NCBI RefSeq assembly: GCF_000400465.1
Contig: NW_008806281.1
Span: 270,001-302,000, forward strand
DNA from: Wallemia ichthyophaga EXF-994
Taxonomy: Eukaryota; Fungi; Basidiomycota
Length of the DNA stretch: 32,000 nt
Direction of reading: 5' to 3'
The translations under genes and the position numbers were made by a program. Shown here piece by piece: positions 53 to 31,234 of the stretch. Position 1 is the first letter of the stretch; every line of letters begins with the position of its first letter. The notes below the pieces were generated by a model. It was not told where the DNA came from, did not search any database, and was given only the letters and a program-made list of their open reading frames with translations.

Positions 53-427
53 GTGTGGTGATCTGTACTGTTGTAATTCTATCGCAATTGATTATTTATA
101 TTCTGTGCAATGATTTACAAGGCTTTAACACTTGAATACACCATAAGTTGTGCTTATCCCTGCGCGATAATCGATATTATGAAATGTGTTAGTTAGCAGG
201 ATTATGATCAATTGATCTCATTTTTAATTTCCAGCTCACTTTTAGCGCGATTTCCTTTTTCGGCGACGGGCCTTACTATAAAGGCCGGACTTGTTTCGTT
301 AATTATTTGTCAAGTCAAAGATCGCTGGACGTTCTAACCTCAATCAACTGGTATTGATTAAGACAGAGTCTCTGGGAGATAAAACCACAGCACAGCACAC
401 ACACAGACACACACATACACACTCACA

Positions 428-1566: not shown

Positions 1567-2755
1567 ATGTCAATTCCATCCGTGTCACGAGCAGAGATAG
1601 TCCAGTGGATAAATGGGGTACTTGACAGCAATTATACCAAAGTAGAGCAGTGCGGAACCGGTGCGATTTACTGCCAGCTTCTCGATTCAATTTACCGTGC
1701 GTGGTGATGTGTTTGTGGGGAGTAGCGGGTTTAACGGGGATTTACAGAGAATGTGCCACTGGGGAGAGTCAAGTTTAATGCTCGCCAGGTGTGTTAAATG
1801 GGTTGGCAAACACCACAGCACTCACCAACATTCCCAGGAATACGAGTACATAAACAACTTCAAAATTCTGCAAACGGCGTTTAGAGTGAGTGTCTTGCTT
1901 TTCCTGCTTCTCTACTCACACAATTCTCGCCAGTCTAACAAGAGTGAGTTGCTTGTCTTGTCCACTTGACCACACGGTTAACCACAATCCAGTGTGAGTG
2001 AATTCATTTTCCCAGCATTCAACTCACACAGCTCAGAAACAAGGTGAGCTAATTCTTTCTAAAAGCATCCCTCTCACTCCACCCATCCAGCCCATTCCCG
2101 TCACAGCTCTTGTGAAATGCAAAATGCAAGACAACCTCGAATTCTGCCAGTGGTTTAAGAAATTTTGGGACGAGCATTTCCCCGGTGGTGAGTATGACGC
2201 TGTCGGCAGAAGATCAGGTGCTCCCGGCGCTGCTGTGTCTGCCACACCTTCAAGCGGTGGTCCTACACCACGAACCTCCTCCGCAGCCGGCACACGGCGA
2301 CCAGCCAAACTCAGCGGTGGCGGTGTATCCTCAGCCGCTGCCGATGCTCAAATCGAGTCTTTAAACGCGCAGATGGGCGACCTCAAAATAAATTTCGATT
2401 CTCTCGAGAAGGTGGGAGCGAGGTGTGGGAGTGTGACTGTTGCTAATCCACCTTATTGCATTGCAGGAACGTGACTTCTACTTTGCCAAGGTGGGTTGTT
2501 ATGGCTTGTGGGTTACTCACCCGTCTCACTCCATCCAGCTCCGTGATATTGAAATCTTGGTTCAAACTCACCTCGAAAACCCAGAAACTATCGATACACC
2601 TGCCAGTGAGGCCTTCCAACAGATTCAGCAGATACTCTACTCTACAGAGGTGGGTTGAGGTTGTTTTTGAACACGCTCACACTCACTCACACTCACCACT
2701 CCAACAGGAAGGCTTCGAAGTGCCAGAAGGCGAGGAGGAAGACGAAACGTTCTGA
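1567..2755 (+). CDS. BIM1: EB1-family microtubule plus-end binding protein (CH domain + EB1 C-terminal domain), multi-exon
   Basis: Spliced model: [43 protein letters not shown]...[15 protein letters not shown]...[18 protein letters not shown]...[18 protein letters not shown]...EEEDETF. Introns 1697-1747, 1789-1837, 1886-1933, 1944-1992, 1994-2036, 2044-2090, 2412-2466, 2491-2538, 2650-2707. Confidence 0.95.
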
Positions 2756-2897: not shown

Positions 2898-4528
2898 CTA
2901 CGTAAACATATCATAGAAATTAAAAGCCAGGCAGAAAAACATAACGCTGAAGCCATAGATTATGAGCAAACGACTACCGATACGCAGCCATCTACGACTA
3001 GGATCAGTATCATTTCTGCTGAGAGCTCTATAAAAGAGACCTGGAAGGATAAATGAGATGGCAGTGGAGCCAGTGCTGCCAACGAAAGCGAGTACTTTGT
3101 CTAATTGGCTAACCATCATAGCGATTGACCAAGTGAAGAACAAAATCAAGACTGTCAAGGTGGAGTGTCTGAGAGGAGAAGAAGGAGGAGGAATTTTAAA
3201 CTCGTCATTTGCGTCCTCACCGTCGCTATCACCAACTTGATCATCACGGTGTTCGTCTCCATCACCCTCCCACTGCTGCCACTCGGGCTTGGTTGTCTTT
3301 GCGCTGCTTATGATCTTGTCGAGACTGTTGCGACAGGGATGGACTTGGAGAGGGTAAGAAGAGAGGACAAGCACGGCGATAGCGAGACGACCGAAAGATA
3401 TCAAGATGGAAGTATCTGCGTGGTGTTTGAAAGTATAAAAACACTCACACCCCACTCACCTGGATACATGGACATAATGTTGCTGTTCACCTTATCGCCG
3501 AATGTGACGTAGCCCAACACACCGATGATTTGGTAGAGACCAGCAGCGATGCTGTTGGAGGTGGTTAGTAAGCATGAGCATGAGCATGATCATCAGCATC
3601 AGCAATTCAACGCACCCTATCGAGATGGCTATTACGGCGCAGGTGCTCCCGTGGCTGTTCGACCGCAGCTCGTTCTTGACAGGGTAGAACTGCAGCAGTG
3701 AGTTTTGTGTTCTATGTTATGTGGTCAGGTAGATGCTACTTACATTCTGCGCGCATGTGAATGCGAATACCTAGAAGCAGTGTGAGTGATTTGCCCCTCA
3801 AAACCCCCAACACCCACCAATACGGGGAATTTAGAAATTGCGGAAGAATCGAATTTCGCCCAAGTGATATTGCCAGGTGGAGGGAGAGGGATAGGGGAGT
3901 GAATAGCGCATAGAACAACGATCATGAGTAGGTAGGTAGCGCTAAATATGGAAATGTACGACGTGTATCTGAGTGAGTTCAAATGTCTCATGTGGGCTAG
4001 AGGCGAGAGGATCACGACGAATAGGGAAATCCAGAAGTGCCTGGAGAGGAGTACGGATGGAGGTTCAAAGTGAGAGGGAGTGAGGTGGTGGTAGAATGAC
4101 GTAACGAGTGGCGGCAGTAGCTGGCCGAGGATTAGTAGGTAGCTGATAGCCACGCCGAAGCATTTCAAGGCGATTGCAATGTCAAAGTAGATGGCAGCGT
4201 TTGGGTAGGTGATGTTGGCTACAGCGTTGAAAGAGCTGCTGCGTTTGCTTCCAAGCTGGGTTGATGACAGGTGTAGCAGGTATAGGCCAAATGAAGAGAG
4301 GAATGAAGAGAGGAGAATGAGAATTACAGCAGGTATCAAGCCGGTGGAAGAGATCACACTAGGCATTGCTAGCATTCCAGTGCCTATGATAGTGTTGGCT
4401 AGGTTAGCAACAGAGCTTGGAATTGAAGCCGTGTGGAGAGCGCGTGGCCGGTGGTTGGATTCTAATAGAGGCTGTTGTGTACTGTGATTACTCCTGGAAA
4501 TCCTTCGGATCTGATTTGAATTGGACAT
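2898..4528 (-). CDS. Vacuolar amino acid transporter, Aa_trans family (AVT5/6/7-like), multi-exon
   Basis: NLANTIIGTGMLAMP, IALKCFGVAISYL, exon VFAFTCAQN, SYPLQVHPCR, VGSTGSTAISFILPG and multiple TM segments. ATG at 4528. Confidence 0.9.
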
Positions 4529-17497: not shown

Positions 17498-19573
17498 ATG
17501 AAGGAGATTCGCTGTGTGGTTTGCGGTGATCAAGGCGTTGGAAAGACGTCGATAATCGTTAATTTAATTAAAAATGATTTTATAGAGGTGGTTGATCACT
17601 GCCTGCCTGAGGTGGTTGTCGAGTTGGATAACAATCTACACCTGATCGACACTAGTTCCTTGAATTTAGAGCGAGAACTAAAGAAATCTAATGTTATATG
17701 CCTGGTCTACTCTGTCGCTGACCCTAATAACCACGAAAATATTCAAAATTGGCTTCTCTACTTTAAATCTATCGGGATCAATAACCCTATCATTCTAATC
17801 GGCAATAAAATTGACTTGGACTGTCCCAGCTACTCTCTCCACTCGGACATTACCCCAATCATGAAGCAATTCAAACAAGTTGAGTCTTGTGTTGAGTCTT
17901 CGGCGAAATTGTCTATAAACATCAACGAAATCTTTTATTTCGCTCAGAGGGCTGTTCTCTATCCTACAGCTCCCTTATACGATTCCAGGCTACACACCCT
18001 TAAGCCTGCTTCTGCAGCTGCTTTGTCTAGGATTTTCAAACTCTGCGATTCAAATAAAGATGGTCTCCTTGATTATACTGAGCTCAATGCATTTCAAATA
18101 AAGTGCTTCAACTCGCCTTTGTCCGATGGAGACCTCCGAGACATTACCCAGCTCGTCTCCCAGCACTCCCCCCAAACCATCAGCACACTCCCAGACAATT
18201 CAATCGCTCTCACGCAACTCGGATTCATCCTCCTTCATACCATCTTTATCCAGAGAGGAAGACTGGAAACCACGTGGTCTGTTTTGACTAACTTTGGCTA
18301 CGCCCAGGATTTGCGATTGAAGGAAGATTTCCTGTATCCAGAGTGGGTTTCATTTACACCCTTCTACTCTTAACTTATTACATACAGTCTCCACATACCC
18401 CCAAACTCATCTGTAGAACTCTCTCCACAAGGCTACTCATTTTTTACTGAGATTTTTGAAAAGTTCGATGTAGATAAGGATGGAGCGTTGTGCGAGAGCG
18501 AGCTAGAAGAGCTATTCGCAACGTCGCCCGGTAATCCATGGCTCAATAATGGGTTCCCCGACACCACACTTACAGACGAGAAAGGTGCCGTCACTCTGCA
18601 GGGCTGGCTAGCGCAGTGGAGGTGAGTGTGCGAGCGCTTCTACGAAATATCGCACTCATAAACCCACAACCACAGCATGACTACACTCCTCGATCACAAA
18701 ACTACATTAGCTTATCTCGCCTACTTGGGCTACGAGATGGCTTCTGCGCACGAGAACGCAACAACGACATCTGCGCTAAAAACTACCCCTCCTCGTCGTC
18801 GTTCGGGGGATCGCGGAGCTCTTCAGCGCAATGTATTCCTCGCCTATATCATAGGTGCGCCCAACGCCGGCAAAACGAGCCTGCTGCGCGCGCTGCTCAA
18901 CAAGCCGTTTGCTGGTGGGGGTAGTGTGGGTAGCTCGAGCGGTGGGAGTGTGCTGAACGCTGTGAATGCAGTAGAGATGGAAGGTGGTGAGAAGTACCTA
19001 GTAGCGCAGGAGGTGGTTGATTTTGCTGATGTCGCGGGGGGTAGTGGGAGTGTTAGTGGCAAGCACGCCAAGGGCAAACCAGCCACTACGCATCTCCCCC
19101 ACCTTCACAAAGCGGATGTGCTCGTACTAGCGTACGACTGCTCCGACGCCACATCCTTCGCACACCTCACGCACCTAAACAGCATTCACAACCTAGATGG
19201 GCTAGACACGCCGTGCGTCTACGTCGCTACCAAGTCAGACCTTGATCTCGCGCAGCAGCGCAGCGACGTACAACCAGATGTTTATTGTAGGCGTCGCGCA
19301 CTTAATGTGCCCATCGCTGTGAGCGTACAGGCTGGCGAAACGGCGGGACTATTCCAGTATATCTGTTCAGTCGCCAGTACACCCCTTCAAGCCCTGCCGA
19401 GACAGAGGAGAGGAAGGAACGTCGTTAACGCACTCTCTATCGCACTCACTCTCGGGGCTGGCTCTATTGGTATACTTGCCTTTCTCGCCAGAGTTTACGG
19501 CTGGAGATCTCCCACTTCTCTCCTGCTGTCTACGTATAGAGGCGCGTTGCTGTGGGCCAGGAGCTGGCTGTAG
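17498..19573 (+). CDS. GEM1: Mitochondrial Rho (Miro) GTPase: GTPase-EF-EF-GTPase-TM
   Basis: GDQGVGKT, FYFAQRAVLYPTAPLYD, EF hands DSNKDGLLD and DVDKDGAL, GWLAQWSMTTLLD, second P-loop GAPNAGKT and C-terminal TM. Introns 18343-18387 and 18622-18675. Confidence 0.96.
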
Positions 19574-23197: not shown

Positions 23198-24874
23198 ATG
23201 ACTGAAATCGCTTTAAACAAGGAATTCGTTGGGCCAGAGGATGCTAATCAAGGTGAGTTGAATCCTCTTGAGGCTGTCCAACAAGAACACGCGCCAGAAG
23301 ACGTTGCAGAGGCTATAGAAGATTCTTCTGCTTGTGTGCATGAGCCTGGGCCTGAGCAAGTAGCTGAGCCTGAGTCTGAGCAAGTAGCTAAGCCTGAGTC
23401 TGAGCAAGTAGCTAAGCCTGAGCCTGAGGTAGCAGCTGAGCCAATAAATGAGTCAAAAGCCAACCCAGCCAACCCTGATTCAACAACAAACCCACCCGCT
23501 AAACCAGCTGTAACTAAAAAGGTCGTTAAACGCGTCGTACGCTCAACTGCACCTGCTGGCAATCCAAAGGCACCCACTCGCAGACCAATTGGCGCGTCTT
23601 CCACTACAACCACTAAAACTACAAAGCCTGATACTTCTCGTACGCATCCTACAAGTACCACTAGCACTGCCACTCGTTCTGGTCCAGGTACTCAATCTCA
23701 CCCATCACATCCATCAGCCTCACGGGCCCCAAGAACCACCGCCAACCGCTCATCCTCAATTTCTACTCCACGCGCTGATCCTCCCCCAGCTACCACCGCA
23801 CGCAGAACCACTATCGGCTCAACCAAGCCATCCACTGGGGCTGCCGTCAAGGAGAACAAACCACCTGCACCTCGCATGATCAGGAAGAATCCCACTGCGC
23901 CACCAGCACAAGCAAACACAGCTCAATTAGATAAACTCAACGCGCGTATTGCACAGCTCGAGGCAGTTGTTGATGAAAACACCTCTTTGCAAGACAAGTA
24001 CGACGCAGCTAATACCCAAGTAAACGAGTATCAATTGGTTATTGTCAATCTTGAGAAGAAAATGGAGGCAATGAAGACGTTTGTGGATGAGCACGACCGT
24101 ATGGCTGCCGCTGCTGCTACTTCTGTCAATGACACACAGCGCATGCAGTCTGACCTCGATTGCGCAAGAGCAGAAAGCGAGCAATTCAACAAGGCTACTG
24201 GAGAAGCTGAGCAGAAGGTGAAACAGTTGGAGGTGCGTCGAGTGTTAGCACTATGATATGTCGTATTAACCTACTTCACAGGATGAACTCGCCAACACCA
24301 AAGCAAATCACCTTGACACGCAAGAAAAAGCACTGACTGAAAAGAGCGAGTTAATTAGCAAGTTGGAAGTGGAGATGAAAAACTTAAGTGAGACACACGC
24401 GGGTAGTCAAAAGGAGCGCGATGATGTGGCTGCACAGCTCAACACTGCCAATGCACGCATCAGTGAGCTTGAACACCACGCTCACACCCTCAACGACTCG
24501 ATGCAAGTCGAAAACGCTCAACTAAAGAGCAAGATTGAGGAATTGCGTACGTTGGTGGCTGATAAGATGCAAGAGGATGAAGAGGTGCTGAAAAGTGGGC
24601 TCATTTGCTTTTTGTGCGCTATACTAACCAATCGCAGTGAAAGAAGAAATGCAAAGTCTCAGAATGAGTGCTGAGAGTGCTGAAAATGCTCAAAATACAC
24701 CAAACAAAGACGGTGCTGAACGTGCGTAGGAGTAATGAGCTCACAGCATCCATTTTGACTCCTCCTCCAGGCGTACAAGAGCTTGAAGGCGAGCTGAGCA
24801 AGTCCGAAACGCTTATCGCTGATTTAAAGGCGGTAAATGAGCGTATAATGAATCAATTGGCACAACAAGAGTGA
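23198..24874 (+). CDS. Hypothetical protein: acidic repeat N-terminus, Thr/Pro/Arg-rich disordered middle, C-terminal coiled coil
   Basis: Long ORF plus exons joined by three short GT-AG introns (~24233, ~24596, ~24722) that keep the frame. Heptad-rich C-terminus. Confidence 0.75.
23342..23437 (+). repeat. Coding tandem repeat, 4 x 24 nt (EPxxEQVA units)
   Basis: Units GAGCCTGGGCCTGAGCAAGTAGCT, GAGCCTGAGTCTGAGCAAGTAGCT, AAGCCTGAGTCTGAGCAAGTAGCT and AAGCCTGAGCCTGAGGTAGCAGCT. Confidence 0.95.
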
Positions 24875-30900: not shown

Positions 30901-31234
30901 ATGCCAGAACACTTCAAGAAAGCCGAACAAGTCGTGAGTTGTGAACAGTTGCACTAGACATTTCCTCTAACAACATCAGGTCGATCCAGCTGGCCACGGT
31001 ATGCCAACCAAGGATAACCTCAACGACAAGTTGATGAGCGAACGTCCAGCAGGCATCGCCGGTACCACCACCTCTACCACGGACGCTCCAGGCCCAGTCG
31101 ATGACAGAACTCAAGAGGAGAAGTACGCAGACTCACAAGCTACTGCCCAAGTAAACAAGGGTGGTGACAATGTCGTCCCTACCCCAGAGCAACAAACTGA
31201 CCTCAACAACATGAACGAGCGTCTCTCCAAGTAA
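30901..31234 (+). CDS. Small (~95 aa) highly hydrophilic, probably disordered protein
   Basis: Exon 1 MPEHFKKAEQV, intron 30934-30979 (GTGAGT...CTAAC...CAG), then VDPAGHGMPTKDNLNDKL...NERLSK* in frame. Confidence 0.7.

What the first reader, a model, noticed from the sequence alone, without database searches (positions are those of the whole stretch)
1886..2090. Probable single-nucleotide exon inside a 10-nt / 1-nt / 7-nt micro-exon chain in EB1
Seen: four back-to-back introns of the size typical here (1886-1933, 48 nt; 1944-1992, 49 nt; 1994-2036, 43 nt; 2044-2090, 47 nt). Each has a GTGAG donor, a CTCAC/TTAAC branch motif and a CAG acceptor. They leave exons TCTAACAAGA, T (position 1993) and AAACAAG, which join to TCT AAC AAG ATA AAC AAG, giving AFR-SNKINK-PIPV. 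This matches the conserved EB1 CH-domain segment (AFxxxKIDKPIPV). Skipping only the 1-nt exon frameshifts the gene. Inference: either an obligatory 1-nt exon or a recursive/twin-intron splicing route. One-nt exons are very rarely described and gene predictors miss them.
Basis: partly seen in the sequence, partly recalled or inferred. Interest (0 to 1): 0.8.

Follow-up and report, generated by a model that had tools for sequence, protein, structure and literature searches.

The report
One-nucleotide exon in Wallemia EB1
The EB1/Mal3 microtubule-binding gene of the salt-loving fungus Wallemia ichthyophaga almost certainly contains an exon made of a single T, flanked by exons of 10 and 7 bases; five Wallemia-type genomes keep this layout, both public gene models miss it, and one-base exons are rare but already described elsewhere.

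Summary
Window 1886-2090 holds four complete short introns (48, 49, 43 and 47 nt). They leave exons TCTAACAAGA, T (1993) and AAACAAG.

The window is Wallemia ichthyophaga EXF-994, and the gene (1567-2755, + strand) is EB1/Mal3/Bim1. With the lone T, the model gives 246 aa reading AFR-SNKINK-PIPV. It aligns without gaps to solved Bim1 and Mal3 CH domains. It also has the 18-residue spacing seen in 115 of 115 listed homologues.

The T is the middle base of an Ile codon. That position is I, V or L in 120 of 120 homologues.

Four other Wallemia-type genomes have the same 10/1/7 chain with YAG-T-GT. Three of them were compared with the window; their intron interiors are diverged to random level.

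The GenBank model (GeneMark-ES) deletes KPIPV. The JGI W. mellicola model needs a non-canonical 100-nt intron.

I found no RNA evidence with these tools, so inclusion of the T in mRNA is inferred, not shown.

One-nt exons are already known in Arabidopsis APC11, Fusarium CYP621A and Coprinopsis cinerea (13 cases). This is therefore a new, unusually well-conserved member of a known kind.

The parts
1567..2755 (+). EB1/Mal3/Bim1 gene of Wallemia ichthyophaga, ATG to TGA. Corrected model has 10 exons and 9 introns and encodes 246 aa ending EEDETF.
   Evidence: Model built and translated. Pfam CH (PF00307) and EB1 (PF03271). Identical DNA in KE007231.1 (L002).
1838..1885 (+). Exon 3 (48 nt), [16 protein letters not shown], ending in phase 0.
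1886..1933 (+). Chain intron 1 (48 nt, phase 0). GTGAGT donor, CTCAC branch motif, CCAG acceptor. Wallemia-specific position.
   Evidence: Absent in Coprinopsis, Calocera, Cronartium and Serendipita.
1934..1943 (+). 10-nt micro-exon TCTAACAAGA (S N K plus the first base of the Ile codon).
   Evidence: 10 nt in all five genomes.
1944..1992 (+). Chain intron 2 (49 nt, phase 1). GTGAGT donor, TTAAC branch motif 11 nt from the end, CCAG acceptor.
1993..1993 (+). Single-nucleotide exon T, the middle base of the Ile codon A|T|A.
   Evidence: YAG-T-GT kept in five genomes. Position is I/V/L in 120 of 120 homologues.
1994..2036 (+). Chain intron 3 (43 nt, phase 2). GTGAGT donor, CTCAC branch motif 10 nt from the end, TCAG acceptor.
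2037..2043 (+). 7-nt micro-exon AAACAAG (third base of Ile, then N K).
   Evidence: 7 nt in all five genomes.
2044..2090 (+). Chain intron 4 (47 nt, phase 0, between K and PIPV). GTGAGC donor, CTCAC branch motif, CCAG acceptor. An ancient basidiomycete intron position.
   Evidence: Same position in Coprinopsis marcescibilis, Calocera, Cronartium and Serendipita.
2091..2411 (+). Exon 7 (321 nt): [18 protein letters not shown]..., the linker, and the start of the coiled coil.
1697..1747 (+). Intron (51 nt, phase 1 after SIY). Ancient position.
1789..1837 (+). Intron (49 nt, phase 0 after NARQ). Wallemia-specific position.
2412..2466 (+). Intron (55 nt). It is followed by a 24-nt exon, 2467-2490 (ERDFYFAK).
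2491..2538 (+). Intron (48 nt, phase 0 before LRDIE). Ancient position.
2650..2707 (+). Last intron (58 nt, phase 0 after YSTE). Ancient position.

Best explanation
Position 1993 is a real, constitutive one-nucleotide exon of the W. ichthyophaga EB1 gene. It sits in a chain of exons of 10, 1 and 7 nt separated by four ordinary short U2-type introns. Each of the two introns that touch the T has its own 5' splice site, branch motif and YAG acceptor, and a length typical for the species, so each is recognised and removed as a separate intron (intron definition). The acceptor AG of intron 2 and the donor GT of intron 3 are one base apart. The factors that bind them therefore very probably cannot sit there together, so the two introns would be removed one after the other. 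Either order gives a legitimate intermediate: an 8-nt exon TAAACAAG or an 11-nt exon TCTAACAAGAT. The T supplies the middle base of an Ile codon (ATA) in the conserved K-I-D/N-K-PIPV segment of the CH domain. Joining donor 1944 to acceptor 2036 would frameshift the mRNA into an early stop. Shown: the anatomy, the frame logic, the match to homologues, and conservation in five genomes. Inferred: presence of the T in mRNA, sequential removal, and the fate of mis-spliced RNA.
For: 1. Anatomy is exactly as described.
2. The model with the T gives 246 aa with CH and EB1 domains and an EEDETF tail.
3. It aligns without gaps to solved Bim1 2qjx (140.5 bits) and Mal3 4abo. The GenBank model needs a 4-residue gap (130.5 bits).
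4. 115 of 115 matched homologues have 18 residues between LQ and KCKMQ. The corrected model has 18 and the GenBank model has 14.
5. The residue made by the T is I (110), V (6) or L (4) in 120 homologues. All of these have T as the second codon base.
6. Enumerating all GT/GC-AG paths, the 10/1/7 path is best by about 20 bits in the window, L003 and L010. It ties with one weak-site path in W. mellicola.
7. The same chain occurs in W. mellicola (ACAAACAAAA|T|AAGCAAA), Wallemia sp. SRR25399871 (TCTAATAAGA|T|AAACAAG), an AT-rich Wallemia-like metagenome genome (GCTAATAAAA|T|TGATAAG = ANKIDK) and a W. mellicola relative.
8. Intron interiors are at shuffled-control identity, while exons are 75-92% identical.
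9. In the AT-rich genome all four introns are longer (58-65 nt), and introns 2 and 3 lengthen individually (64 and 65 nt), as expected for two separate introns.
10. The JGI model can only be rebuilt with a 100-nt non-canonical intron. It therefore also carries 18 nt of mRNA in this segment.
Against: No transcript evidence was obtainable.
- No transcript-derived Wallemia EB1 protein is in the protein collection.
- The spliced junction was not found in JGI metagenome or metatranscriptome contigs.
- In W. mellicola one other canonical path (TNKSDK) scores the same against the homologue profile. It uses weak sites and does not come up among the top-scoring paths listed for the other three genomes.
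- The L003 and L010 copies of intron 3 lack a strict YTNAY branch motif. Only CTTAA- or CTAAA-like motifs are present.
- The order of removal and the steric argument are inference from general knowledge of the spliceosome.
Confidence: 0.88

Rival explanations
1. The GenBank (GeneMark-ES) path is the real one: introns 1944-2031 and 2044-2106, giving AFRSNKTQKQALV and a 242-aa protein with no 1-nt exon.
For: All sites are canonical GT-AG and the frame stays open. It is the deposited model P0001.
Against: It deletes four residues, including the KPIPV motif, from the CH domain. It is the only one of 116 proteins with a 14-residue rather than an 18-residue spacer. It forces a gap against solved structures. 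Its second acceptor (ACAG at 2103-2106) and the extra AG at 2030-2031 are absent from the other Wallemia genomes. The model is ab initio (PMC3849046).
Confidence: 0.03
2. Introns 2 and 3 plus the T are removed as one intron with a non-canonical boundary (TG-AG or GT-CA), as in the JGI W. mellicola model. This would give Arg (AGA) in place of Ile.
For: P0002 (TNKRSK) can only be rebuilt this way. It preserves the 18-nt length.
Against: It needs a very rare splice-site type. It puts R (or S in the AT-rich genome) at a position that is I/V/L in 120 of 120 homologues. It scores 22.5-28.1 bits against 33.6-39.2. It leaves unexplained why YAG-T-GT, two branch motifs and two species-typical intron lengths are all conserved.
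Confidence: 0.04
3. One long intron 1886-2031 gives AFR-LRNK-PIPV. Or 1886-2090 is removed whole, giving AFR-PIPV.
For: Both are in frame in this genome.
Against: They give 12 or 8 residues where every homologue has 14. The introns would be 146-205 nt in a gene whose introns are 43-58 nt. The 2031 acceptor is not present in the other genomes. These paths would also make the conserved micro-exon sequences meaningless.
Confidence: 0.02
4. The T-containing path is used, but the chain is spliced inefficiently or in a regulated way. Frameshifted isoforms that skip the T or retain an intron would then be a substantial product (regulated unproductive splicing).
For: Intron retention is the main alternative-splicing class reported for this fungus, in 15% of genes (PMC3849046). 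Four introns within 205 nt must compete for factors.
Against: Nothing in the sequence points to regulation. EB1 is a housekeeping gene. This reading adds to the main explanation and does not replace it.
Confidence: 0.15

Closest known systems
Single-nucleotide exon of Arabidopsis thaliana APC11 (Guo and Liu 2015, PMC4674806)
   Same: One nucleotide lies between a canonical acceptor and a canonical donor. It is constitutive, needed for the frame, and was mis-annotated in the databases.
   Different: The plant case has cDNA and reporter evidence, which this one lacks. It is a different kingdom and gene. Here the 1-nt exon sits in a chain with 10-nt and 7-nt exons and very short introns.
One-nucleotide exon of Fusarium CYP621A P450 genes (Nelson and Syed 2026, PMC12940212)
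   Same: It is fungal. The nucleotide is the middle base of a codon in a conserved motif (Gly of PKG there, Ile of KIDK here). It was inferred from phase mismatch and conservation across orthologues, and automated models miss it.
   Different: The Fusarium exon is a G (AG-G-GT) in an ascomycete accessory enzyme and is supported by SRA reads. The Wallemia exon is a T in a basidiomycete core cytoskeleton gene, flanked by two further micro-exons. No reads have been checked yet.
Thirteen 1-nt exons in the long-read annotation of Coprinopsis cinerea (PMC12230235)
   Same: They are in a basidiomycete with short introns and many micro-exons, and omission creates premature stops.
   Different: That is a genome-wide catalogue based on transcripts. 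The EB1 orthologue of the related Coprinopsis marcescibilis has no introns at these positions, so the Wallemia case arose independently.
Recursive splicing at zero-nucleotide ratchet points (Drosophila and vertebrate long introns; from my own knowledge)
   Same: An acceptor and a donor are juxtaposed, so the two halves must be removed stepwise.
   Different: At a ratchet point no nucleotide is kept and the 5' site is regenerated by the first ligation. Here one base is kept and both sites pre-exist. The introns are about 45 nt, not tens of kilobases.
Stwintrons (spliceosomal twin introns) of filamentous fungi (PMC12403724, PMC8469720)
   Same: They are fungal, involve two U2 introns in intimate contact, and imply ordered removal.
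   Different: In a stwintron the internal intron interrupts a splice signal of the external one, and nothing remains in the mRNA. Here no signal is interrupted and a nucleotide remains.

Membership tests
Spliceosomal single-nucleotide exon | Exactly one nucleotide between a canonical 3' splice site (YAG) and a canonical 5' splice site (GT...) | tested here: met
   ccag T gtgagt at 1989-1999. The same is seen in four other genomes.
Spliceosomal single-nucleotide exon | Each flanking intron is complete on its own (donor, branch motif, acceptor, species-typical length) | tested here: met
   Introns of 49 nt and 43 nt, each with GTGAGT, TTAAC or CTCAC at 10-11 nt from the end, and YAG. Lengths scale with species (64 and 65 nt in L010). 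The branch motif of intron 3 is degenerate in L003 and L010.
Spliceosomal single-nucleotide exon | The nucleotide is required for the reading frame and for a conserved residue | tested here: met
   Its omission gives a frameshift and a stop. It encodes Ile at a position that is I/V/L in 120 of 120 homologues. The model aligns without gaps to PDB structures.
Spliceosomal single-nucleotide exon | The nucleotide is present at the junction in mature mRNA (cDNA or RNA-seq) | not testable with these tools
   I looked for transcript-derived proteins and for the spliced junction in JGI contigs. Nothing was found. SRA reads cannot be searched here.
Stwintron (spliceosomal twin intron) | An internal intron interrupts the donor, branch point or acceptor of an external intron, and the whole unit is removed leaving no nucleotide | tested here: not met
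   Both introns have intact signals in the genomic sequence. Removing 1944-2036 as a unit shifts the frame.
Recursive splice site (zero-nt exon) | YAG|GTRAGT with no retained base, and the 5' site regenerated after the first step | tested here: not met
   One base (T) lies between the AG and the GT and must be retained.
RP/EB family (EB1/Mal3/Bim1) | N-terminal calponin-homology domain, C-terminal EB1 coiled-coil motif and an acidic EEY/F tail | tested here: met
   PF00307 at 30.4 bits (cut-off 26) and PF03271 at 61.3 bits. Bim1 and Mal3 are the best PDB hits. The tail is EEDETF.

The most novel reading that the evidence does not exclude
The Wallemia EB1 chain (four introns and exons of 10, 1 and 7 nt within 205 nt, kept across the genus) is a natural substrate on which spliceosomes must act strictly one after another, in a fixed order. 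Three of the four introns arose in a local burst of intron gain confined to an 18-nt stretch of coding sequence in the Wallemia lineage. If so, it would be a compact model for how intron definition copes with exons below any steric limit, and for how clustered intron gain creates micro-exons.
Probability: 0.3. Interest if true: 0.6.

Novelty: new member of a known kind. Interest (0 to 1): 0.5.

Why it matters
- It corrects the gene model of a core cytoskeletal protein in two reference genomes. GenBank's W. ichthyophaga model lacks KPIPV. JGI's W. mellicola model carries Arg for Ile and a non-canonical intron.
- It adds a 1-nt exon supported by conservation in five genomes whose introns, where compared, have diverged to saturation. 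That is direct evidence of purifying selection on a single exonic base and its two abutting splice sites.
- It shows that homology-guided enumeration of splice paths can recover such exons where ab initio predictors fail.
- The 10/1/7 chain is small enough to clone as a minigene for studying the order of intron removal in an intron-definition organism.

Tried and rejected
- A loose regular-expression count of intron-like segments against dinucleotide shuffles was not discriminating: 218 seen against about 150 expected. Three of the four other places it flagged (19132-19330, 30934-31049 and 23424-23577 minus strand) were read and are ordinary coding sequence or a single intron. I judged the fourth (3690-3817 minus strand) only by eye from the sequence, as a 27-nt exon and not a 3-nt one. 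I dropped this as evidence.
- The search for transcript evidence failed. A full-length protein search, a segment search, exact look-up of four corrected proteins and a degenerate scan for the spliced junction in JGI metagenome contigs all found nothing from Wallemia mRNA.
- The stwintron and zero-nt recursive-site readings were considered and rejected on their definitions.
- I considered a tandem-duplication origin of the chain, because AACAAG precedes the donors of both intron 2 and intron 4. I did not test the introns for similarity to each other. Any ancient duplicate would probably be undetectable, because the interiors are at random-level identity between species. This stays a speculation.
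- A literature search on EST support for the JGI W. sebi/mellicola model returned nothing useful.

Full report
**What is in the window**

The window is from Wallemia ichthyophaga EXF-994. The EB1 gene sequence 1567-2755 is found base for base in GenBank scaffold KE007231.1 (locus L002). The best protein hit is that strain's 'Microtubule integrity protein mal3' (P0001). Upstream lies an intronless AA9-like gene (428-1500). Downstream, on the minus strand, lies an amino-acid transporter gene. Related genomes share this gene order.

**Check of the observation**

- Intron 1886-1933: 48 nt, GTGAGT...CTCAC...CCAG.
- Intron 1944-1992: 49 nt, GTGAGT...TTAAC...CCAG.
- Intron 1994-2036: 43 nt, GTGAGT...CTCAC...TCAG.
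- Intron 2044-2090: 47 nt, GTGAGC...CTCAC...CCAG.

The branch-motif adenosines lie 10-15 nt from the 3' ends. The other five introns of the gene are 48-58 nt and use the same kinds of signal.

The exons left between the four introns are TCTAACAAGA, T and AAACAAG. Joined, the 18 nt read SNKINK. The full model has ten exons. It encodes 246 aa with a CH domain, an EB1 C-terminal motif and an EEDETF tail. Leaving out the T shifts the frame into a stop 13 codons later.

**Does the protein need those 18 nt and that T?**

- Among the 120 best homologues, 115 match a simple anchor pattern, and all 115 have 18 residues between ...LQ and KCKMQ. The corrected model also has 18. GenBank's P0001 has 14 and is the only outlier.
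- In a column count over 120 homologues, the residue supplied by the codon A|T|A is Ile 110, Val 6, Leu 4. All of these have T as the second codon base. The next residues are D/E/N, K/R and then PIPV.
- The corrected CH domain aligns without a gap to the solved structures of Bim1 (2qjx, 140.5 bits) and Mal3 (4abo). The GenBank version needs a four-residue gap and scores 10 bits less.

**Are there other ways through?**

I enumerated every combination of GT/GC donors and AG acceptors (introns of 30 nt or more) between the end of exon 3 and the KCKMQ anchor. About 2,000 paths are open and in frame, and 77 give the required 14 residues. Scored against a profile of the homologues, the 10/1/7 path gets 39.2 bits, the runner-up 18.5, and the median is -44.8.

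The result is the same in Wallemia sp. L003 (39.2 against 18.5) and in the AT-rich genome L010 (46.7 against 22.5). In W. mellicola one other path (TNKSDK; donor GTGGTT, acceptor GAAG, 100-nt intron) ties at 33.7 against 33.6. It does not appear among the top-scoring paths listed for the other three genomes.

**Comparative evidence**

Four further genomes carry the same chain.
- W. mellicola CBS 633.66 (L001): ACAAACAAAA | T | AAGCAAA = TNKISK.
- An unnamed Wallemia in Logan assembly SRR25399871 (L003): TCTAATAAGA | T | AAACAAG = SNKINK.
- An AT-rich (31.6% GC) Wallemia-like genome seen in many metagenome assemblies (L010): GCTAATAAAA | T | TGATAAG = ANKIDK, which is exactly the family consensus.
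- A W. mellicola relative (L014), in which the donor of intron 3 is GTAAGT.

Pairwise identity of the intron interiors among the window and three of these genomes (L014 was not included) is 39-56%. Shuffled controls give 51%. The flanking exons are 75-92% identical (alignment A1). The introns are therefore saturated with change, yet YAG-T-GT sits at the same codon position in every genome.

Intron lengths track the species. In L010 all four introns are 58-65 nt, and introns 2 and 3 are 64 and 65 nt. This is what two independent introns would do. A single composite intron would not be expected to behave this way.

**What the public models did**

W. ichthyophaga was annotated with GeneMark-ES, an ab initio predictor (PMC3849046). 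Mapping P0001 back onto the DNA shows introns 1944-2031 and 2044-2106. These produce AFRSNKTQKQALV and delete KPIPV. The acceptors this path needs do not exist in the other genomes.

JGI's W. mellicola protein P0002 reads TNKRSK. It can only be reproduced with a 100-nt intron bounded by AG-AC, GT-CA or TG-AG. That model therefore also carries 18 nt here, and it borrowed a neighbouring G in place of the stranded T.

**Age of the introns**

I mapped annotated EB1 proteins onto their genes in Coprinopsis marcescibilis, Calocera viscosa, Cronartium quercuum and Serendipita vermifera.
- Only the phase-0 intron between K and PIPV (window 2044-2090) is shared, so it is old.
- The three introns at AFR|S, K|(A) and (AT)|A are specific to the Wallemia lineage among the taxa sampled.
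- Whether they were gained there or lost elsewhere cannot be settled with four outgroups.

**How it most likely works**

- Shown: two complete introns abut a single T, and the T is needed for the frame and for a conserved Ile.
- Inferred from general knowledge of the spliceosome: in fungi with introns of about 50 nt, the splice sites are paired across the intron, so a tiny exon is not in itself an obstacle.
- Inferred: factors at the acceptor AG of intron 2 and U1 at the donor of intron 3 would overlap, because U1 contacts the last exon bases, here A-G-T. The two introns should therefore be removed in turn.
- Either order is chemically unproblematic. The '5' exon' held by the spliceosome is the whole upstream RNA, not one base.
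- Pairing donor 1944 with acceptor 2036 would yield a frameshifted mRNA with an early stop. It would presumably be degraded.

**Comparison with what is known**

One-nucleotide exons have already been described:
- in Arabidopsis APC11, with experimental proof (PMC4674806);
- in Fusarium CYP621A, with SRA reads, presented as the second case overall and the first in a fungus (PMC12940212);
- thirteen in the long-read annotation of Coprinopsis cinerea (PMC12230235).

The Wallemia EB1 exon meets the sequence-level criteria of this class. It fails the definitions of a stwintron and of a zero-nt recursive site. It is therefore a new member of a known kind. Three things mark it out: the 10/1/7 chain, its location in a housekeeping gene, and conservation across genomes with saturated introns.

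**What is missing**

I obtained no RNA evidence. Protein searches found only genomic ORF fragments from Wallemia. Exact look-ups of the four corrected proteins were negative. A degenerate scan for the spliced junction in JGI contigs found nothing. RNA-seq data for W. ichthyophaga exist, and they would settle the matter in minutes.

**Verdict**

My confidence that the T is a real 1-nt exon is about 0.88. Interest is moderate (0.5): it is rare and well supported, and it is useful for annotation and as a splicing substrate, but it is not unprecedented.

Noticed in passing
L001 4093-4097; L003 3597-3601 (corresponds to window about 2565-2575): W. mellicola and Wallemia sp. L003 have a 5-nt micro-exon AAACT (ILV-QT-HL) between two extra introns. 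W. ichthyophaga and the AT-rich genome L010 have no introns there. This is intron presence/absence variation within the genus.
   Followed up: partly
L001 3571-3616; L010 2464-2514; L014 about 1212-1259 (corresponds to window about 2122): A phase-2 intron in the Gln codon of KCKM|Q is present in W. mellicola, L010, L014, Coprinopsis and Cronartium. It is absent from the window and from L003. It looks like loss of an ancient intron in the W. ichthyophaga branch.
   Followed up: partly
window 2467-2490: There is a further small exon of 24 nt (ERDFYFAK) between introns 2412-2466 and 2491-2538. The gene carries nine introns in 1.19 kb.
   Followed up: yes
L010 (ENA ERZ28600918 scaffold_13, 173 kb), also L011, L012, L004: An unnamed, AT-rich (31.6% GC in the locus) genome has Wallemia gene order (AA9, EB1, amino-acid transporter). 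It recurs in at least 28 blocks of metagenome and Logan assemblies. I did not determine the species.
   Followed up: no
window 375-427: A CA-rich low-complexity tract (cacagcacagcacacacacagacacacacatacacactcaca) lies directly upstream of the ATG of the AA9-like ORF (428-1500).
   Followed up: no
window 3690-3817, minus strand: In the neighbouring amino-acid transporter gene, two short introns appear by eye to flank a 27-nt exon. My loose scan had flagged it as a 3-nt exon. I read it only from the plus-strand sequence and did not check it by script.
   Followed up: partly
P0028, P0030, P0032 and other Mycena EB1 proteins: Many annotated basidiomycete EB1 proteins lack a recorded CH-domain Pfam hit although the segment examined is intact. 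The CH hit is weak in this family generally (30.4 bits against a cut-off of 26), so absence of PF00307 is not a sign of mis-annotation.
   Followed up: partly
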